From positions 124,001-188,000 of the IMG/VR virus record IMGVR_UViG_3300048625_000299: a stretch of 64,000 nucleotides of DNA, one strand, 5' to 3'. The notes beneath the pieces are model-generated. The model saw only the letters and a program-made list of their open reading frames with translations, did not search any database and was not told where the DNA came from. The position numbers and the translations under genes were made by a program. Position 1 is the stretch's first letter. The number at the start of each line of letters is the position of its first letter. This document shows positions 23,488-32,665 of this stretch, one piece after another.

Positions 23488-24438
23488 ATGGCTCACATGG
23501 TCGAAACAATGGCATATGCAGGTGAAACCCCATGGCACGGACTCGGTGTACAAGTACCGGCTGATCTATCACCCGCGCAAATGTTGGAAAAAGCAGGACT
23601 TGATTGGACTGTAGAGAAGATTCCTGCGTTTGCTGAGATTGGTGGAAAAAAAACCAGCGTCGGGTGGTCTGCGCTTGTCCGTAATACTGATGAGCAGATG
23701 CTTAGTGTGGTTTCCAATGATTGGAATCCAGTGCAGAACCATGAGGCATTTGAATTCTTCCATGAATATTGCGCTGCTGGTGATATGGAAATGCATACTG
23801 CTGGTTCACTGCGCAACGGCCAGATCGTATGGGGTCTCGCCAAGGTGAAAGAATCGTTTGAATTGTTCAAAGGCGACCAAGTTGACTCATATTTGCTGTT
23901 TACTAACCCTCATAAGTTCGGCCAATCGATCGACGTCCGCTTTACACCAATTCGCGTCGTATGTAATAACACATTGACGCTGTCTCTTTCCAAATCCGAA
24001 GAGCGCATGGTCAAGAAAAGCCACCGTACAGAGTTTGATGCTGCTTTGGTCAAAGAGCAACTCGGTATTGCAACCGATAAGCTCGCAAAATACAAGGAAA
24101 TGGCTGAATTCTTGGGCAGCAAGCGCTATACTAACGGCTCAATGACTGAGTATTTTAATAAAATCTTCCCTGTTATCGCATATAATAAGGAAAAAGGCGC
24201 GCAGCGTAAGGAAATATCTAAGTCTGCCACACGTGCAATGGAAATTGTATCGACACAGCCTGGTGCTCAGTTCGCTGAAGGATCGTTCTGGCAACTGTTC
24301 AATGCAGTGACATACCTGACAGACCACGAAATCGGTCGCTCAGCAGACACTCGCTTGCAATCTGCATGGTTTGGTCCTAATAAGAACCTGAAGATCAAAG
24401 CGCTGGAAACAGCAGTTGAAATGGCGGAGATGGCATAA
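23488..24438 (+). CDS. DUF932/DUF945 phage-plasmid protein
   Basis: MAHMVETMAYAGETPWHGLG...TAGSLRNG...TPIRVVCNNTL signature. Confidence 0.9.
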   Translation: MAHMVETMAYAGETPWHGLGVQVPADLSPAQMLEKAGLDWTVEKIPAFAEIGGKKTSVGWSALVRNTDEQMLSVVSNDWNPVQNHEAFEFFHEYCAAGDMEMHTAGSLRNGQIVWGLAKVKESFELFKGDQVDSYLLFTNPHKFGQSIDVRFTPIRVVCNNTLTLSLSKSEERMVKKSHRTEFDAALVKEQLGIATDKLAKYKEMAEFLGSKRYTNGSMTEYFNKIFPVIAYNKEKGAQRKEISKSATRAMEIVSTQPGAQFAEGSFWQLFNAVTYLTDHEIGRSADTRLQSAWFGPNKNLKIKALETAVEMAEMA

Positions 24439-24858: not shown

Positions 24859-25713
24859 ATGATGTACAAAAATCAATTCGTCGCCGCTGTCAAATCCGGC
24901 AATAAAGTTCTTCGTGAAGTGGGCGATACCGTCTACCTTCCATTCGGATGCGAGTATTCCATCCTTCTCAAAAACCTCAATATCGTTCGAGCAGAAGCGC
25001 GGATCACGATCGATGGTGAAGATGTCCTCGGTGGCAACTCGATTGTTGTCAATCCGAATTCCGATCTCGAACTAGAGCGTTTCTTGAAAGACCTTTCCAA
25101 GGGCAATCGATTCAAATTCATCGAACGTACATCCTCTGTAGAACAACATCGAGGTGTTGGTGCAGGAGATGGACTGATTCGAATTGAATGGCAGTATGAG
25201 AAGCCACGCCCAATCTATACCGTCCGCCCTGATCCGTTTTCCAGCACGCTGTGGGGCAACAATAACTCACCATGGATCCGAGCGTCTGGTGCGACATATA
25301 ACGTCAATGGTGCGCTACGTGGCGTCGATATGTCGAATGGCGATAGCACAAGAGCATATGCCGCTTCTGCAACCAACGCTACATTGCAGAATATGGGAAT
25401 CACAGCTCAGGCTGCTTCATTCCATGACGGGATGGCAACTATGGACTGGGCCGAACTGAAACAATCAACAAATGATGTCGGCATCACCGTTCCAGGCTCG
25501 TTATCGGATCAGAAGTTTGCCACCGTTGCTTCGTTCCCGCTTGAAGACCAAAAGCACGTGATTGTGTTGCAACTCAAGGGCGAAACAGAGTATAATAAGG
25601 TTACTGCACCTGTTACCGTAAAAGCCAAACCCAAGTGTGTAACTTGTGGTAAGGTAAATAAGGCAACAGCTAAATTTTGTTCCAATTGCGGAACTGCATT
25701 AGAAATCGTTTAA
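24859..25713 (+). CDS. Conserved hypothetical protein with C-terminal zinc ribbon
   Basis: CVTCGK...FCSNCG at C-terminus; TAGGAG SD. Confidence 0.75.
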   Translation: MMYKNQFVAAVKSGNKVLREVGDTVYLPFGCEYSILLKNLNIVRAEARITIDGEDVLGGNSIVVNPNSDLELERFLKDLSKGNRFKFIERTSSVEQHRGVGAGDGLIRIEWQYEKPRPIYTVRPDPFSSTLWGNNNSPWIRASGATYNVNGALRGVDMSNGDSTRAYAASATNATLQNMGITAQAASFHDGMATMDWAELKQSTNDVGITVPGSLSDQKFATVASFPLEDQKHVIVLQLKGETEYNKVTAPVTVKAKPKCVTCGKVNKATAKFCSNCGTALEIV

Positions 25714-25911
25714 ACATATACCATGATCCTGACAAAATCAAATAGACGCAACGGCATGGCCGCTCGCAAAGACGGCCTCAGAAGCATGTGGTGCGGCCGT
25801 TGCGATCGTGATGTTGTTGGTGATTATGGTAAGTGTGGAGCTTGTGGTTACTCCCGCAAAAAGGAAAAAAAGAAAATTCCTAGGTTGGAGAAGCTCGAGG
25901 AATTGTTGTAA

Positions 25912-26245
25912 TCCCTTCAAAGCGAAGGACTTCTGGACGCGGGTTCGACTCCCGCCAGGTCCACCAAAAGGATTTTCAATGGATCAGTGGGATGATTATT
26001 TTCCTCCCTTAAATTTGTGGAACTACAGCCTACATTGGCAGTGGATCGATACTGATTCGGAAAATCCTTCTGATGGGCCTGCCATGGTTTCGACAGGGGT
26101 AGATAGTAGAGACGGCAACACGGTAGGCGATGACCGTAAATCAAGCGAAATCTATAAATGCAAACGATGAAGCATTTTTGATGGCTGCCTAATAGGCCCC
26201 ATCTGAGTTTTGCTGGTTGAACTTGGAAACAGAATCAACCAGCAC
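25912..26245 (+). ncRNA. ssrA: Circularly permuted (two-piece) tmRNA, tag (A)ANDEAFLMAA
   Basis: T-arm GCGGG-TTCGACT-CCCGC then CAGGTCC-A-CCA (25939-25966) lies upstream of the 5' strand GGGCCTG (26075); acceptor stem has G3:U70; tag ORF 26160-26192; 5' and 3' limits approximate. Confidence 0.9.
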
Positions 26246-26263
26246 TAATTTAAGGAGTAAAAA

Positions 26264-26884
26264 TTGCTTAGAGTTGCACATACCGAATTCATCGGTCCAG
26301 CAGTTCTAACCAAGCCGATAGACGACAGTCTGTTTACTTGGGAGAACATCCAATATTTTGATAATGATGGCTTCCAGTTAAGCAAACTTGAACAAGAATT
26401 CTACAAAGCGAATGGCGTAGAGCTCAACTACATTAATGGTGTGTGGGGAGCACAAACGCCATGGTTTGTCGGCAACGATCCACACTTTGTAGTCGACCAC
26501 AGCATGCTAATCACAAGATGCTGTTATAGCGGAGAGGCGCTGGCTCAGATCAAGCGATTTGCTACGCCAGATAAGTTTCCGTATCTGATGAAGTACACGA
26601 TGATTCGCCCTAAATGGGGAATCGACTTTGCACTCGAGTATTTCAATAAGGACAACTTTCTAGAAGTGCTCCATCTTGAGTTGGATTTCCATGACATTGG
26701 TACTGCACGGACGATCAAAGGATTTTATGAACACCGAATCGTCACTACTGATTGGAATGAATTCGTCCTCAGCCTAATTGACCTCAAAGATCAATGGGAC
26801 ATTCTTGAGGGGATCGAGCGTAATGATTGGAAAGCTCGATTCTGGGGAATGTCGAAGGCTGAAAACATTCTCAAAGTTGTATAA
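26264..26884 (+). CDS. Hypothetical protein (TTG start)
   Basis: 206-aa ORF with AAGGAG SD. Confidence 0.7.
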   Translation: MLRVAHTEFIGPAVLTKPIDDSLFTWENIQYFDNDGFQLSKLEQEFYKANGVELNYINGVWGAQTPWFVGNDPHFVVDHSMLITRCCYSGEALAQIKRFATPDKFPYLMKYTMIRPKWGIDFALEYFNKDNFLEVLHLELDFHDIGTARTIKGFYEHRIVTTDWNEFVLSLIDLKDQWDILEGIERNDWKARFWGMSKAENILKVV

Positions 26885-28623: not shown

Positions 28624-29205
28624 ATGAATGGTTATGAAGCGTACAAATTATACGTTGCGATGAAGAACCATTTCAATTCTCAAACATACGACTTTTTTAA
28701 GTATGGTGGGAAAACTCGAGCGAGCTTGGCGGCGTTCGAGAAACGAAATGACAAACACTTCTTCAACGTCCTTGCTAAACACAAGGACTGCCAGAATTAC
28801 ATACTTGCAAACATTGTCGAAGGTGGCCCAGATCTTTGGGTCGGCGACATTGCAAATGAACAACAGGCTGAGAGCAACTACTTGAGATGGAAGGCCCGTA
28901 CGGAATCTATGACGTACAACTTTACCAACGATCTTGATCAGTTGCTCACAGACTACGATGACAACCTGAAGGTGAATGATGGTCAACATCCACACCTTCT
29001 GAAGTTGGTAATACAAAAATCAATATCACTAGAAACGCTGGTCATCCTAAACGACCTATGCGGTTTCTTCAAGTATTGGTCACGTAATATTACCGACCCT
29101 GTTGTGTGGCCGCGATATAAGATGCTTGCAAAAAAGTATCGGCCATTCGTTCCTTTTGACCCACAAAAGACGAAGAAAATTGTGATTGATAAGTTTAAAA
29201 CCTAG
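28624..29205 (+). CDS. gp59: Helicase loader gp59
   Basis: YKLYVAMKNHF...YDFFKYGGK...F.KRNDK.FF...SLETLVIL. Confidence 0.9.
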   Translation: MNGYEAYKLYVAMKNHFNSQTYDFFKYGGKTRASLAAFEKRNDKHFFNVLAKHKDCQNYILANIVEGGPDLWVGDIANEQQAESNYLRWKARTESMTYNFTNDLDQLLTDYDDNLKVNDGQHPHLLKLVIQKSISLETLVILNDLCGFFKYWSRNITDPVVWPRYKMLAKKYRPFVPFDPQKTKKIVIDKFKT

Positions 29206-29305: not shown

Positions 29306-30238
29306 ATGGCAATCGATTTCAATGCCCTCAAAACAAACCGCAAGTCTCTTACAGACAAGTTGGTATCAGAAGTTCAGAAACTGAACGCACCTGCCTCAGG
29401 CAACTCCCAAGACGAAGACAAATACTGGAAACCAGAAGTTGACAAAGCTGGTAATGGCTATGCTATTATCCGTTTCTTGCCAGCTCCAGGTGGTGAAGAC
29501 CTTCCATATGTCCGTATCTTCGACCACGGCTTCCAAGGCCCAGGCGGATGGTACATTGAGAAGTCTTTGACTACACTCAACCAAAAAGATCCAGTGTCTG
29601 AGTACAATTCACAACTGTGGAACTCTGGCATCGAAGCAAACAAAGACCTTGTTCGCAAATATAAGCGTCGTCTGTCGTTCACTTCCAACATCTATGTTGT
29701 TAAGGATCCAGCTCATCCAGAAAACGAAGGTAAAGTATTCTTGTTCAAGTATGGCAAGAAGATCTGGGACAAGATCGAACTCGCTATGAACCCAGAGTTC
29801 GAAGACGAGCAAAAGATCAACCCATTCGATTTGTGGGAAGGTGCTAACTTCAAGTTGAAGATCCGCAACGTTGAAGGCTACCGTAACTACGACAAGTCTG
29901 AATTCGAAGGCGCTGCTCCATTGTTTGCGAGCGACGAAGATCTCGAAGCAGTTTGGAAACAAGAGCACTCACTCGCTGAGTTGGTCGATCCAAAGAACTT
30001 CAAGACCTATGACGAATTGAAGACTCGTCTGAACCGTGCTCTCGGTTTGGACGGTGGCGCAGCTCAACCACGCACTACAGCTGAGTCTGCAAAGACAACA
30101 ACAGCTCCATGGGACGAGGAACCAGCAGCCGCGGCAGCTCCAGCATTTAAAACAGCTGCAGCAAGACCAGCTCCAGCAGCAACAGAAGACGACGATGACG
30201 AATCGCTCGCATTCTTCAAGAAGCTAGCTGAAGAGTAA
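29306..30238 (+). CDS. gp32: Single-stranded DNA-binding protein gp32
   Basis: WKPEVDKAGNGYAIIRFLPAP...HGFQGPGGWYIE...NPFDLWEGANFKLKIR; acidic tail. Confidence 0.97.
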   Translation: MAIDFNALKTNRKSLTDKLVSEVQKLNAPASGNSQDEDKYWKPEVDKAGNGYAIIRFLPAPGGEDLPYVRIFDHGFQGPGGWYIEKSLTTLNQKDPVSEYNSQLWNSGIEANKDLVRKYKRRLSFTSNIYVVKDPAHPENEGKVFLFKYGKKIWDKIELAMNPEFEDEQKINPFDLWEGANFKLKIRNVEGYRNYDKSEFEGAAPLFASDEDLEAVWKQEHSLAELVDPKNFKTYDELKTRLNRALGLDGGAAQPRTTAESAKTTTAPWDEEPAAAAAPAFKTAAARPAPAATEDDDDESLAFFKKLAEE

Positions 30239-30245
30239 AAAGTAA

Positions 30246-30267
30246 GGCCCCTTTCGGGGCCTTTTTT
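30246..30267. terminator. Bidirectional rho-independent terminator
   Basis: GGCCCC-TTTC-GGGGCC-TTTTTT between convergent genes. Confidence 0.85.
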
Positions 30268-32665
30268 ATTGGAATGTTGGAATTGCTCCGCCCGTCTTAT
30301 ACCACGGCTGACCGAAAGAGTGTTTCTCTTTGTATATGCTGACTGGTGGTACTGATGGAGGCGTCTTCGAGCTGTTGCCGCCTGTAGGAGTAGATGGTGC
30401 TGCTGGTGATGCTGCAACAGCATTGCCAGGCAGGCTATCAAAGTTACCAGTAAACATATTGCTAAAGTCGTTGAACCCTCTAATCGTTTCCTGGAACCCT
30501 TGCAAGGCTGCAATCTGATCGTCCTTCAGTCCCATACTCTTCAAACTTCTAGTTTGAATCATCATCGGGGTGTCCGGAACGCCAGCAGCAGTCGCCCCTG
30601 CAGTAACGGCCATTGGGCTATTGACGTTACCTACATCGATGCCGGACCCGGACGCCACTGTCTTAGCATAGTTTGCGATCTCGACTGGGTTGGTCGAGGT
30701 ATGCCACTGCTTTAGGCCTTGAGCGATTGTCAGGTTAGCGTACAAGGGTCTTTCCCACTGACGACGTTGAGCCATTAAGCCAGCTTGCTTAGAAGGAAAT
30801 CTTGCAAATTGACCGCCGTCCGATGCTGTGTCGCCTGGTGCCCCGCCAAATTCCTTCATCCAGTTTGCAAACTTCAAGTTGCCTGGGTTGTTATTTCTAA
30901 ACGACATCGACCCAGGATACCAACCTTCAGCTTTTGCCTGGCCACCAAGGATTTGCGATTTCTCTTCTTCTGTCAGATCGCTGAATTTCAAAGTTAGCAG
31001 CGATCTGCGTGCTTCACCTGAAGCCTCTGGCTGCAAACCAGAAGGTGTTTCGGTTGGCTTTGCGTTGTTTGTCTGAGGGGTCGGAGTTGTGTCGGTCTCT
31101 GTTATGCTAGCACCAGTTGTTTTCGGTGTACGTAGTTTTCCAGCCGCATATGATGAAGCAGCAGTAACGCCAAATCCAACAGCAGCCGCACCAGCTGGCG
31201 TAATGAACGGGGTAAGAGCTGCAGAACCGATCGATCCAACAAGCCCCATAGCCTCCATACCAGCAGCAGCGTAATCGCCATTCTCGATATCATCATATAT
31301 CTGCGGAAGCGTCATAGCGACATTCAATGCGCCGAGAAGTTTACCACCATATTTCGAAAATATCGATCCTGCTTGTTTACCAGCATCGCCAACGGCACTG
31401 ACAGCTTCCTTGACTCTTACGCCAGCCTTTTCCATCGATGTGAGTTGGCCATTGGCAAGACGGTCCATCTTTGCCTGCTGAGCTACCGAACGTCCACCAG
31501 CATCGCCTGGGATGACAATACCACCAGCAGTCATTCTTTCCCCGACACGTAGAGGGGATGATGGAGCATTAGTGGGAACTTGCCATGGGGCAGCTGTTGC
31601 GGCAGCAGGTGCCGATGGCGTTACTGCTTGAGCTGCGTTGGCCGCACGGGCCGCGCCTAGTCTGTTGAGAGCGCCGACTCCCTTGTAGCTGCCATATAAT
31701 CCAGCTCCAAGTGTCGCGAGCCCAATCGATTCCTCGGAATATTGTTCGCCACCAAAGAATCCGCCAACACCGCCAAGGACACCACCAGTCCAACCGCCCA
31801 TCTTTTTACCTGCCAAGAACCCCATAGAGGCACCTGTCATGCCACCAAGGTTTTTCTTATTCAGTGGAAGATCTTTACCAGCAGCATCAGTGCCGACGCC
31901 GAGTCCTTCTTTGACGTATTTGGAGATGGTAGGACTGAGGTCTGCAAATGCTTCCTTGACGCCTTGAACGATTGCACCACCAACTGCTGTCCCTACATCC
32001 TTGGCTGTTTCTTTGATTTGGGTATTGAGCTGTTTGGACAATTCATCAGATGATGGCAACCCAGCGCCCTTAAGAAAATCTTCAAGGAAGTTCTTAATCT
32101 CGTCCTTATTTTTGTATATCAAACCACCAGCTGCAACGCCAAGACCAGCCTTAGCGATGGTGCCTAGGTTGCCAGACAACAGGTCTCCGAGGGACGATAG
32201 CATCCCTCCCTTATCACCTGCCTTCTCGTTCTTATTGTCGTTTGCGAACAAGGATCCGAGTGAGGATGGGGAAGATGCATATGGACGGTTGTCGCCAGCA
32301 TTTTTTGATATTTGGTTTTGCGCTTTTAGTTGCGCAGTGCTGAGACTACGAATATCTTTAAGTAGCGCATTCATGGAACGAAGTTGTGCATTCATCCCAC
32401 TGAGACTGCTTGCTGTAGTCTTGCTTACTTTCTTGATATCGACGACGTCGTCTTTTTGCTTTTTGTCTGTCGACTTGCTTCCACTACCTTGTTGCTTCTT
32501 ATACTCAGCAACAGTCTGTCTGATAATGGGGCCCACACCTAAACCCAGCTTATACAGCGATCCACGTGGATCGAATTGATCCATGACAGCTTCTTTAGCT
32601 GTTCTGGCTGCTCCCGTTACCGTCTTTCTGGTACCTTGTGCTGCTGCGTCTAGTATGTTGGCCAT
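30266..32665 (-). CDS. Tape-measure/baseplate-hub-like protein with NNPGNL muramidase-like domain
   Basis: Long Ala/Gly-rich helical sequence; FRNNNPGNLKF...FARFPSKQAGL motif; follows gp26/gp51. Confidence 0.65.
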   Translation of the reverse strand: MANILDAAAQGTRKTVTGAARTAKEAVMDQFDPRGSLYKLGLGVGPIIRQTVAEYKKQQGSGSKSTDKKQKDDVVDIKKVSKTTASSLSGMNAQLRSMNALLKDIRSLSTAQLKAQNQISKNAGDNRPYASSPSSLGSLFANDNKNEKAGDKGGMLSSLGDLLSGNLGTIAKAGLGVAAGGLIYKNKDEIKNFLEDFLKGAGLPSSDELSKQLNTQIKETAKDVGTAVGGAIVQGVKEAFADLSPTISKYVKEGLGVGTDAAGKDLPLNKKNLGGMTGASMGFLAGKKMGGWTGGVLGGVGGFFGGEQYSEESIGLATLGAGLYGSYKGVGALNRLGAARAANAAQAVTPSAPAAATAAPWQVPTNAPSSPLRVGERMTAGGIVIPGDAGGRSVAQQAKMDRLANGQLTSMEKAGVRVKEAVSAVGDAGKQAGSIFSKYGGKLLGALNVAMTLPQIYDDIENGDYAAAGMEAMGLVGSIGSAALTPFITPAGAAAVGFGVTAASSYAAGKLRTPKTTGASITETDTTPTPQTNNAKPTETPSGLQPEASGEARRSLLTLKFSDLTEEEKSQILGGQAKAEGWYPGSMSFRNNNPGNLKFANWMKEFGGAPGDTASDGGQFARFPSKQAGLMAQRRQWERPLYANLTIAQGLKQWHTSTNPVEIANYAKTVASGSGIDVGNVNSPMAVTAGATAAGVPDTPMMIQTRSLKSMGLKDDQIAALQGFQETIRGFNDFSNMFTGNFDSLPGNAVAASPAAPSTPTGGNSSKTPPSVPPVSIYKEKHSFGQPWYKTGGAIPTFQ

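What the first reader, a model, noticed from the sequence alone, without database searches (positions are those of the whole stretch)
25912..26245. Phage-encoded circularly permuted two-piece tmRNA
Seen: the acceptor piece (T-arm plus CCA, 25939-25966) precedes the coding piece (GGGCCTG at 26075; tag ANDEAFLMAA-stop 26160-26192), with G3:U70 alanine identity. A 108-nt intervening segment is closed by a long stem (AAGGATTTTC 25968-77 / GAAAATCCTT 26060-69). No smpB is in the window. Established: permuted tmRNAs occur in Alphaproteobacteria, some marine cyanobacteria and a betaproteobacterial lineage; ANDE-type tags are beta/gamma-like. Inference: betaproteobacterial host, or an independent permutation in phage; may rescue ribosomes when host tmRNA/tRNAs are cleaved by defences.
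Basis: partly seen in the sequence, partly recalled or inferred. Interest (0 to 1): 0.75.

Follow-up and report, generated by a model that had tools for sequence, protein, structure and literature searches.

The report
Phage-borne two-piece tmRNA gene
A large uncultivated freshwater T4-like phage carries a complete, circularly permuted ribosome-rescue RNA (tmRNA) gene; the gene is real, but phage copies of this kind are already on record, and it says nothing about the host.

Summary
The window lies in a complete 234,864-bp T4-like phage genome with 40 tRNAs and no SmpB.

The kind is not new. A 2022 paper already lists 53 permuted tmRNA genes in isolated phages.

The host inference fails. The gene is 81-90% identical to genes on other viral contigs but only about 71% to Rhodocyclales genes. 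The same "beta-type" gene also sits in phages of Pseudomonas, Xanthomonas, Stenotrophomonas and Synechococcus elongatus. An independent permutation is unlikely, because the full-length beta model matches.

Selection is evident in 28 phage genes. Compensatory changes occur in the helix joining the pieces, the acceptor stem (G3.U invariant) and the stem closing the spacer. Two close relatives keep the gene at the same position near gp59-gp32.

New side observations:
- The spacer interior is hypervariable.
- In many relatives the spacer holds a small ORF ending exactly at the TGA before the coding piece, often a 19-27-aa hydrophobic peptide.
- The window's gene is a mosaic of two sublineages.

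Processing into two pieces and tagging activity remain untested.

The parts
25904..25936 (+). 5' part of the acceptor piece: the strands of the long helix (P2) that hold the two pieces together. 25904-25909 pairs with 26115-26120, and 25929-25935 pairs with 26094-26100. It overlaps the stop codon (25909-25911) of the upstream ORF.
   Evidence: Rfam alignments. RNAalifold on 28 phage genes shows compensatory changes in most of these pairs.
25939..25966 (+). tRNA-like 3' domain: T arm (stem 25939-25943 / 25951-25955, loop TTCGACT), acceptor 3' strand 25956-25962, discriminator A 25963 and encoded CCA 25964-25966.
   Evidence: The T arm is invariant in 28 of 28 relatives.
25967..26074 (+). Intervening segment (spacer) of 108 nt, expected to be removed. 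Closing stem 25968-25977 / 26060-26069 continues after an AA bulge into a second 9-bp helix. An unpaired TGAT (26071-26074) stands just before G1 of the coding piece.
   Evidence: Fold of -40.4 kcal/mol, z -3.8. The closing stem covaries across the phage family, with 5-15 double changes per pair. The interior is not homologous even in the close relatives L115 and L022.
25979..26170 (+). 63-codon ORF that starts in the spacer, 6 nt behind AAGGA (25968-25972), and runs into the tmRNA body to TGA 26168-26170. It may or may not be translated.
   Evidence: Relatives with proven-looking spacer ORFs have the same layout. This peptide itself has no homologue.
26075..26120 (+). Start of the coding piece: acceptor 5' strand GGGCCTG (26075-26081, G3.U70 with 25960), the TGGTTTCGAC element, and the 3' strands of helix P2 (26094-26120).
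26121..26159 (+). Hairpin modelled by Rfam as part of pseudoknot 1 (about 26120-26137), followed by the conserved TAAAT lead-in before the resume codon.
   Evidence: Rfam alignments. GTAAATGCAAACG is conserved across the family. The pseudoknot itself was not tested.
26160..26195 (+). Tag reading frame: resume codon GCA, peptide ANDEAFLMAA, double stop TAA TAG. The stops lie in the loop of a hairpin, GATGG 26180-26184 / CCATC 26199-26203.
26212..26243 (+). 3' terminal hairpin of the coding piece (GCTGGTTGA / TCAACCAGC). The second hairpin of the bacterial beta model is absent. No terminator follows; the ribosome-binding site of the next ORF starts at 26252.
   Evidence: L023 keeps this hairpin through a compensatory change.
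25723..25911 (+). Upstream 62-aa ORF whose last codons overlap the start of the tmRNA gene. It is not found in the close relatives.
26264..26884 (+). Downstream 206-aa ORF of unknown function, probably co-transcribed. It is 88% identical in relative L115, directly behind its tmRNA.

Best explanation
This is a working ssrA gene of the two-piece (circularly permuted) type. It belongs to a lineage carried by phages and is inherited within a group of freshwater T4-like phages.

Proposed mechanism:
1. The gene is transcribed on the + strand as part of a longer transcript running towards the gp59-gp32 replication genes.
2. The precursor folds so that the acceptor piece (about 25904-25966) and the coding piece (26075 to about 26243) pair through a 7-bp acceptor stem and the long helix P2.
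3. The 108-nt spacer sticks out as a hairpin.
4. Host RNase P cuts before G26075. Host nucleases trim to CCA at 25966 and remove the spacer and the outer flanks.
5. Host alanyl-tRNA synthetase charges the RNA through G3.U70 and A73.
6. Host SmpB delivers it to stalled ribosomes.
7. Translation resumes at GCA 26160 and adds ANDEAFLMAA, which marks the product for host proteases.

Together with the phage's 40 tRNAs, the gene would keep ribosomes available during infection, when host RNA synthesis stops and broken mRNAs accumulate.

Shown here: gene identity, structure under selection, phage location, absence of a phage SmpB.

Inferred: transcription unit, processing, charging, tagging, benefit to the phage.
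For: - Detection: ARAGORN and two covariance models match at full length, far over threshold.
- Pairing of the pieces: the acceptor stem pairs 7/7 with G3.U in all 8 sequence variants seen among viral permuted genes.
- Covariation: RNAalifold on 28 phage genes gives 39 pairs, 24 with compensatory changes, in P2, the acceptor stem and the spacer-closing stem.
- Genome: complete T4-like phage with terminal repeats, 40 tRNAs, and no SmpB, integrase or standard tmRNA.
- Synteny: the close relatives L115 and L022 have the order Zn-ribbon protein, tmRNA, (206-aa ORF), cell-wall hydrolase, gp59, gp32. More distant T4-like contigs also keep a tmRNA within a few kb of gp59/gp32.
- Abundance: more than 200 further viral contigs carry permuted genes.
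- Tag: it is of the bacterial proteolysis type. ANDE..F..AA is shared with Rhodocyclales tags such as ANDERFALAA and ANDERFAMAA.
- Presence in RNA data: the region occurs in a freshwater metatranscriptome library. Contig depth there is uneven (35, 95, 234), whereas it is flat in a DNA run from a different sample.
- Precedent: two-piece tmRNA works in Caulobacter (Keiler et al. 2000, as cited in PMC9004378).
Against: - No direct evidence of processing or ends. Only assembled contigs were available, and RNA libraries can hold DNA.
- No promoter or terminator of its own was found.
- The second 3' hairpin of the bacterial beta model is missing, and pseudoknot 1 was not tested.
- The host, and hence the fit with its SmpB, synthetase and proteases, is unknown.
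- The tag ends in LMAA rather than the commoner ALAA.
Confidence: 0.8

Rival explanations
1. The RNA is made but acts against the host. It could be a competitor that soaks up SmpB or ribosome A sites to block host trans-translation. Alternatively its tag could have a phage-specific purpose other than ordinary quality control, for example marking host proteins for recycling.
For: - A phage tmRNA-like domain without a tag is reported to inhibit tmRNA (DS6A; PMC4131195 and PMC11915505).
- Tags evolve fast among close relatives: ANDEAFLMAA, ANDSKFALAA, VTANESSYALAA.
- Some family members encode 27-31-aa tags unlike any bacterial one in the sample.
- The Melnitz paper also proposes selective tagging.
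Against: - The gene keeps a full tag frame, the conserved lead-in to the resume codon, and a protease-type C terminus. A pure competitor would not need these.
- The window's own tag is of ordinary length and type.
Confidence: 0.12
2. It is a passenger: a piece of host DNA picked up recently, an attachment-site remnant, or an assembly chimera, with no function in the phage.
For: - tmRNA genes are common integration sites, and their 3' ends are often found in prophages (one search shows many such short matches; PMC9004378).
- Assemblies of both runs break inside the conserved T-arm region.
Against: - The gene is complete, not a fragment.
- The phage is T4-like and has no integrase.
- Two related contigs have the gene in the same place.
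- Compensatory changes show purifying selection within phages.
- The nearest bacterial gene is only about 71% identical.
Confidence: 0.02
3. The stretch is mainly protein-coding (the 120-codon open frame 25808-26170, or the 63-codon ORF from 25979), and the RNA match is secondary.
For: - One frame is open across the whole acceptor piece, the spacer and the first 96 nt of the coding piece.
- Relatives do carry real-looking small ORFs in the spacer.
Against: - Conservation follows the RNA structure, not the frame. The spacer interior is unrelated in close relatives, while the RNA parts are 91-97% identical.
- The peptide has no Pfam or PHROG family and no homologue.
- A spacer ORF would be an addition to the tmRNA, not an alternative to it.
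Confidence: 0.06

Closest known systems
Two-piece tmRNA of Rhodocyclales (Azonexus/Dechloromonas, Thauera, Azoarcus, Accumulibacter, Propionivibrio); Rfam RF01850 beta_tmRNA; the 'third lineage' of Sharkady and Williams 2004 (cited in PMC9004378)
   Same: - Same gene order: acceptor piece, spacer, coding piece.
- Same helix P2 layout.
- Full-length model match at 144 bits.
- Same tag pattern ANDExF..AA.
   Different: - Only about 71% identical over 190 aligned positions.
- It falls in a separate all-viral clade.
- The spacer is 108 nt, against 24-40 nt in the bacterial sample. That sample was limited by the search pattern.
- The last 3' hairpin is absent.
- It sits in a phage, without a neighbouring or genomic smpB.
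Permuted tmRNA genes of isolated phages: Xanthomonas jumbo phage XacN1, Stenotrophomonas Menderavirus (Marzo, Mendera, Moby), Pseudomonas Samunavirus (SM1, PA_L9, PaMx31), Xanthomonas phage JGB6, Synechococcus elongatus phage BUCT-ZZ01
   Same: - All are beta-type by Rfam, at 94-108 bits.
- All have a spacer that ends in TGAT.
- XacN1 falls in the window's 17-row clade.
- Most are listed as 'Permuted' in Table S1 of PMC9004378.
   Different: - They are much more divergent from the window than the uncultivated freshwater contigs are.
- They occur in different phage groups: siphoviruses, jumbo and other myoviruses.
- Their spacers show no ORF.
- Several are unannotated or overlapped by a 'hypothetical protein' in the records.
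Alpha-type two-piece tmRNA of Methylophilales phage Melnitz and pelagimyophages (PMC9004378)
   Same: - A permuted tmRNA in a T4-like aquatic myovirus.
- The RNA type does not match what the host class would predict.
- The proposed roles are the same.
   Different: - Melnitz is alpha-type (RF01849, 107 bits) and is followed by a glutamine riboswitch.
- The window's gene is beta-type with no riboswitch.
- The two genes are at different genome positions.
One-piece tmRNA of mycobacteriophages (Bxz1 group) and Bacillus phage G (PMC4131195)
   Same: A phage-encoded ssrA in a large, tRNA-rich phage that has no smpB.
   Different: Those have the standard gene order. No standard tmRNA is present here.

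Membership tests
Permuted (two-piece) tmRNA | The gene order is circularly permuted: the 3' tRNA-like half with CCA lies upstream of the 5' half and the tag frame. | tested here: met
   Acceptor piece ends at 25966 and the coding piece starts at 26075. RF04321 scores 146 bits against a gathering score of 47.
Permuted (two-piece) tmRNA | A tRNA-Ala-like domain: 7-bp acceptor stem with G3.U70, discriminator A, CCA, and a T arm with the GTTCGA-type loop. | tested here: met
   GGGCCTG / CAGGTCC pairs 7/7, followed by A and CCA. The stem covaries in relatives while G.U stays invariant.
Permuted (two-piece) tmRNA | The pieces are held together by helix P2, between the 5' end of the acceptor piece and the region after the 5' tRNA-like half. 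| tested here: met
   25904-25935 pairs with 26094-26120. Compensatory changes occur at most pairs in 28 phage genes.
Permuted (two-piece) tmRNA | A tag frame that starts at an alanine resume codon, ends in a hydrophobic ..AA C terminus, and is followed by a stop. | tested here: met
   GCA ... ANDEAFLMAA TAA TAG at 26160-26195.
Permuted (two-piece) tmRNA | The transcript is cut into two RNAs and the intervening segment is lost. | not testable with these tools
   Only assembled contigs of the runs were available. The 'joints' over the spacer also occur in a DNA run, so they come from co-occurring relatives rather than from RNA processing.
Permuted (two-piece) tmRNA | It works with SmpB in trans-translation. 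| not testable with these tools
   No SmpB in the phage genome. The host is unknown.
Beta-type two-piece tmRNA (RF01850) | Full-length match to the clade-specific model, over its gathering score and better than the alpha and cyano models. | tested here: met
   144.3 bits against a gathering score of 84, over model positions 1-331. Lower-scoring matches from the same clan were suppressed.
Beta-type two-piece tmRNA (RF01850) | Two hairpins at the 3' end of the coding piece. | tested here: inconclusive
   The first hairpin is well formed (26212-26243). The second is marked non-pairing in the model alignment and runs into the next gene's ribosome-binding site.
Beta-type two-piece tmRNA (RF01850) | It resides in a betaproteobacterial (Rhodocyclales) chromosome. 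| tested here: not met
   It sits in a complete T4-like phage genome. In the tree it lies in an all-viral clade, outside the Rhodocyclales clade.
Phage-borne beta-type permuted tmRNA lineage (defined here) | Located on viral contigs; spacer starts (A/T)AAG.., ends ..TGAT and is closed by a covarying stem; 5' domain close to GGGCCTGCCATGGTTTCGACAGGG. | tested here: met
   The 5' module is 91-97% identical to L085, L011, L115 and L022.

The most novel reading that the evidence does not exclude
In this phage lineage the 'throw-away' spacer of the permuted tmRNA gene may be a slot for small protein genes, so that one precursor would serve as both tmRNA and mRNA.

Evidence in relatives:
- Many spacers carry a ribosome-binding site right after CCA.
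- The ORF stops exactly at the TGA of the TGAT that precedes the RNase P site.
- The excised spacer would therefore be a complete mini-mRNA, often for a 19-27-aa membrane peptide.

In the window the ORF (25979-26170) has no stop before the cut site. The excised spacer would then be a built-in non-stop message, and the peptide could be made only from uncut precursor.

A second unexcluded reading is that the Rhodocyclales two-piece tmRNA descends from such a phage gene rather than the reverse.
Probability: 0.3. Interest if true: 0.65.

Novelty: new member of a known kind. Interest (0 to 1): 0.4.

Why it matters
The main value is a correction. A 'beta-type' two-piece tmRNA in a viral contig should not be used to predict a betaproteobacterial host, because this RNA type circulates among phages of several bacterial classes.

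The gene adds an uncultivated freshwater T4-like phage group to the list of phages with near-complete translation toolkits: 40 tRNAs plus a ribosome-rescue RNA.

The side observations could interest tmRNA and phage specialists if confirmed:
- a covarying stem that closes a hypervariable spacer;
- small ORFs nested in that spacer;
- exchange of modules within the gene;
- a bacterial lineage whose nearest relatives are phage genes.

These points bear on how permuted RNA genes are processed and how they spread.

Tried and rejected
- **Host from the RNA type.** Rejected; see the interpretation verdict.
- **Cyanophage.** gp32 is 65% identical to cyanomyovirus gp32, but the genome has no psbA. Left open.
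- **Direction of transfer between phages and Rhodocyclales.** In the free tree the bacterial clade nests among phage genes. The AU test does not reject a single phage clade (p 0.141), so nothing is claimed.
- **RNA processing from public runs.** Only contigs were available. The joints that skip 96-114 nt of the spacer also occur in DNA, so they reflect related phages with other spacers.
- **Known RNA motif inside the spacer** (such as Melnitz's glutamine riboswitch). None found.
- **Own promoter or terminator.** None found. The nearest promoter-like site is at 25567-25596.
- **Homologues of the window's spacer peptide.**
  - The only match among about 400 loci is the window's own genome under another locus id, L415.
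  - It has no Pfam or PHROG family.
- **Homologues of relative L115's 62-aa spacer ORF.** One near-identical protein among 5.8 billion, so no independent support.
- **Cupriavidus copies as prophage-borne.** Their neighbours look chromosomal (LysR regulator, enolase-family enzyme). Unexplained.
- **Encoded CCA in phage versus bacterial genes.** The comparison was dropped because my two search patterns fixed that feature.
- **Sharkady and Williams 2004.** The paper could not be read.

Full report
**1. The observation**

- The T arm is at 25939-25955 and the acceptor 3' strand CAGGTCC at 25956-25962.
- The discriminator A is at 25963 and CCA at 25964-25966.
- A 108-nt spacer (25967-26074) is closed by a perfect 10-bp stem, 25968-25977 with 26060-26069.
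- GGGCCTG at 26075-26081 pairs 7/7 with the 3' strand and gives G3.U70.
- The tag frame ANDEAFLMAA is at 26160-26189, followed by TAA TAG.

The detectors agree.
- ARAGORN reports a single permuted tmRNA in the window and in the whole genome.
- Rfam gives RF04321 tmRNA_permuted 146.2 bits (gathering 47).
- Rfam gives RF01850 beta_tmRNA 144.3 bits (gathering 84). Both matches cover the full model length.
- No other RNA family matches the region.
- The standard tmRNA model stays under its threshold everywhere in the genome.

The gene runs from about 25904, where the helix joining the two pieces begins, to about 26243, the end of the last hairpin. It sits between a 62-aa ORF, whose stop codon it overlaps, and a 206-aa ORF whose ribosome-binding site starts at 26252.

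**2. The genome**

The window is bases 124001-188000 of a 234,864-base IMG/VR virus record with direct terminal repeats, rated 100% complete.

It is a T4-like myovirus.
- The helicase loader gp59 is at 28624-29205 and gp32 at 29306-30238.
- A tail tube gene, baseplate wedge genes and a DNA end protector follow downstream.
- gp32 is about 65% identical to those of cyanomyoviruses and of the Sinorhizobium phiM12 group.

The genome holds 40 tRNA genes at 24.9-37.6 kb. It has no SmpB, tyrosine integrase, CCA-adding enzyme or psbA.

The same sequence is present in a freshwater metagenome and in a freshwater metatranscriptome library.

**3. Selection on the gene in phages**

Two viral contigs, L115 and L022, are close relatives of this phage. 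Their flanking proteins are 56-89% identical to the window's. They carry a permuted tmRNA at the same position:
- zinc-ribbon protein
- tmRNA
- 206-aa ORF (present in L115, absent in L022)
- SleB-like cell-wall hydrolase
- 127-aa ORF
- gp59
- gp32

More distant T4-like contigs also keep a tmRNA within a few kilobases of gp59/gp32.

Three pattern scans of IMG/VR returned well over 200 viral contigs with ARAGORN-permuted genes.

Among the viral permuted genes, the acceptor stem occurs in eight sequence variants. All pair 7/7 and all keep G3.U.

RNAalifold on 28 phage genes predicts 39 pairs, 24 of them with compensatory double changes. The changes fall in three places:
- the three segments of helix P2;
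- the acceptor stem;
- the stem that closes the spacer, with 5-15 double changes per pair.

The T arm and the G.U pair never vary. This pattern fits an RNA kept functional by selection. It rules out a recently captured host fragment, an attachment-site remnant or a chimera.

**4. Which lineage, and the host**

I aligned the acceptor piece and the coding piece up to the tag stop, about 195 columns. The window's gene is 81-90% identical to genes on viral contigs and about 71% identical to the best bacterial gene.

The careful tree has 127 rows and is rooted on standard tmRNAs rearranged in silico. It shows the following.
- The alpha-type gene of phage Melnitz branches first.
- The beta-type genes form a supported group (97/86).
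- The window lies in a 17-row clade made only of viral genes, including Xanthomonas jumbo phage XacN1 (95/87).
- The Rhodocyclales genes form their own tight clade (97/97). Their nearest neighbours are again phage genes: Pseudomonas phage PA_L9 and two IMG/VR contigs (98/96).

Rfam types the following as beta-type:
- Pseudomonas phage PA_L9
- Xanthomonas phages XacN1 and JGB6
- Stenotrophomonas phage Marzo
- the freshwater cyanophage BUCT-ZZ01, which infects Synechococcus elongatus

As far as I know, these hosts have one-piece tmRNA. That rests on established knowledge, not on a test here.

An independent permutation is also unlikely, because the gene shares the whole beta architecture.

The direction of transfer between phages and Rhodocyclales cannot be decided. 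The bacterial clade nests among phage genes in the free tree, but a tree with all phage beta-type genes held as one clade is not rejected (log-likelihood difference 28.9, AU p 0.141). My samples were also shaped by the search patterns.

**5. What is already known**

Phage tmRNAs have been recorded since the mycobacteriophage Bxz1 group (PMC4131195).

Buchholz et al. 2022 (PMC9004378) reported the following.
- Phage Melnitz carries a two-piece tmRNA.
- They counted 133 unique tmRNA genes in 18,146 phage genomes, 53 of them permuted by ARAGORN.
- Their Table S1 lists Mendera, Moby, YB07, SM1, XacN1, S-CAM3, Ccr29 and others as permuted.

The 2025 tmRNA database holds 79 phage sequences (PMC11915505).

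The kind is therefore known, and this is a new member. I found no paper that describes the beta-type phage lineage as such, or ORFs inside the intervening sequence. The 2025 paper mentions only a tRNA-Ala gene and a repeat element inside intervening sequences.

**6. How it most likely works**

No promoter-like site lies directly upstream. The nearest is TTGCAA-18-TATAAT at 25567-25596. No terminator follows the gene, whereas many family members end in a strong terminator. The gene is therefore probably part of a longer transcript.

The spacer folds into a long hairpin (-40.4 kcal/mol, z -3.8). The 10-bp closing stem continues, after a two-base bulge, into a further 9 base pairs.

The base before G1 is T in 28 of 28 relatives. 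To my knowledge this is the base that bacterial RNase P prefers at position -1.

By analogy with Caulobacter, I infer this sequence of events:
1. RNase P cleaves before 26075.
2. The 3' end is trimmed to CCA at 25966.
3. Host alanyl-tRNA synthetase charges the RNA.
4. The RNA acts with host SmpB.

The tag is of the ordinary proteolysis type, and a bacterial ANDERFAMAA exists in the sample.

The metatranscriptome contigs cover the whole region at uneven depth (35, 95 and 234), whereas a DNA run from a different sample is flat (395/369). This is compatible with transcription but proves neither transcription nor processing.

**7. Seen along the way**

*Hypervariable spacer.* Spacers range from 4 to 211 nt in viral genes. 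The interiors are unrelated even between the window (108 nt), L115 (200 nt) and L022 (138 nt). The ends are kept: (A/T)AAG... at the start and ...TGAT at the end.

*ORFs that end at the TGAT.*
- Of 141 unique viral spacers of at least 50 nt that end in TGAT, 25 hold such an ORF.
- Each starts at an ATG within 30 nt after CCA, often behind TAAGGAG, and stops exactly at the TGA of TGAT.
- Interior shuffles give 5.7 +/- 2.3, with a maximum of 15 in 1000.
- In the frame that ends at that TGA, 15.4% of spacers contain a membrane-like 15-residue window, against 1.6% in the other two frames.
- Sixteen of 19 complete ORFs in spacers of 60-125 nt are membrane-like and 19-37 aa long.
- Related peptides differ by whole codons, for example MNDNLxxLAIGVIVVLVxFALVLL and MDNEYSxxVGFIxVxVVFALVLL.

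*ORFs that run into the tmRNA.* A CPxC...HKC peptide, MKYTALCPxCF...KHKCFSD, recurs in nine spacer variants. It reads on into the tmRNA 5' domain.

*The window's own spacer.* It has the second layout: AAGGA, 6 nt, then ATG at 25979, with the frame open to 26170. The peptide has no relative, so its reality is open.

*Mosaic gene.* The window's 5' module is 91-97% identical to L085, L011, L115 and L022. Its tag end and last hairpin are 95% identical to L023 and L073, which are only 64-70% identical in the 5' module.

**8. Verdict**

It is a new member of a kind that is already published. The host inference and the 'independent permutation' alternative are not supported. Processing and activity are inferred, not shown.

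Noticed in passing
Relatives L062, L076, L389, L353, L364, L374, L344, L371, L404, L082, L309, L397, L103, L284, L090, L115, L018, L107, L002 (spacer between CCA and G1 of their permuted tmRNA genes); window 25979-26170 for the local counterpart: Many phage permuted tmRNA genes hold a small ORF in the intervening segment. It starts just after CCA, behind a Shine-Dalgarno-like TAAGGAG, and stops exactly at the TGA of the conserved TGAT before the coding piece. There are 25 such ORFs against 5.7 expected. Most encode 19-27-aa hydrophobic peptides, a few encode 39-65-aa soluble ones, and the signal is frame-specific.
   Followed up: partly
L382, L352, L369, L387, L368, L384, L381, L006, L406 (101-nt spacers): A recurring 30-codon spacer ORF with a CPxC...HKC zinc-knuckle-like pattern (MKYTALCPxCFxRFxWVxxKGLTKHKCFSD). 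It has no stop before the RNase P site and reads 27-90 nt into the tmRNA body. Variable sites by codon position are pos3 10, pos2 6 and pos1 4.
   Followed up: partly
window 26176-26243 versus 25904-26159: The window's tmRNA gene is a mosaic. The acceptor piece, 5' domain and pseudoknot-1 region match one sublineage at 91-97% (L085, L011, L115, L022). The tag end and last hairpin match another at 95% (L023, L073).
   Followed up: yes
L103, L112, L030, L035, L031, L054, L059, L082, L092, L090 and others (tag frames): A subgroup of the phage lineage encodes unusually long tags of 27-31 residues. An example is ANADTFDFSAMSFTGNTVRGAANESRFALAA, which still ends in the usual ..FALAA.
   Followed up: no
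L120 (PP869205.1 PA_L9, 1460-1844), L121 (AP018399.1 XacN1, 1449-1868), L123 (OQ436456.1 JGB6, 1450-1840), L424 (ON615601.1 BUCT-ZZ01): Beta-type permuted tmRNA genes score over the Rfam threshold in isolated phages, yet the public records leave them unannotated. In JGB6 the gene is overlapped by a 'hypothetical protein' CDS on the opposite strand.
   Followed up: partly
L155, L171, L181, L188 (Cupriavidus contigs); also L133, L178, L182: Several Cupriavidus genomes carry permuted tmRNA genes of two kinds. One (tag ANDEKFALAA) groups with IMG/VR phage genes and the other falls inside the Rhodocyclales clade. In L171 the neighbours look chromosomal (LysR regulator, enolase-family enzyme) rather than prophage-like. 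Whether these are second copies beside a standard ssrA was not checked.
   Followed up: partly
L183 (Pseudomonas indica), L166 (Bacteroidota MAG), L232 (Hydrogenedentota MAG), L141 (Gammaproteobacteria MAG): Rhodocyclales-type two-piece tmRNA genes occur in records named for unrelated taxa. The cause could be transfer, a second copy or misbinning.
   Followed up: no
genome C1:24922-37641 (outside the window): An array of 40 tRNA genes includes duplicates for Glu, Asp, Lys, Tyr, Pro, Asn, Met and Thr. It lies about 110 kb away from the tmRNA gene.
   Followed up: no
window 23488-24438 and 24859-25713: Upstream neighbours are a DUF932 / phrog_1221 protein and a 284-aa protein with a C-terminal zinc ribbon. 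The DUF932 gene has a 69.5% DNA match to the gene annotated 'phage/plasmid like protein' in phage Melnitz. Both neighbours are conserved in L115 and L022.
   Followed up: partly
window 30266-32665 (- strand): A 799-aa ORF with no Pfam or PHROG match lies in a local G+C peak (0.52 against about 0.45), between gp32 and the tail genes.
   Followed up: no
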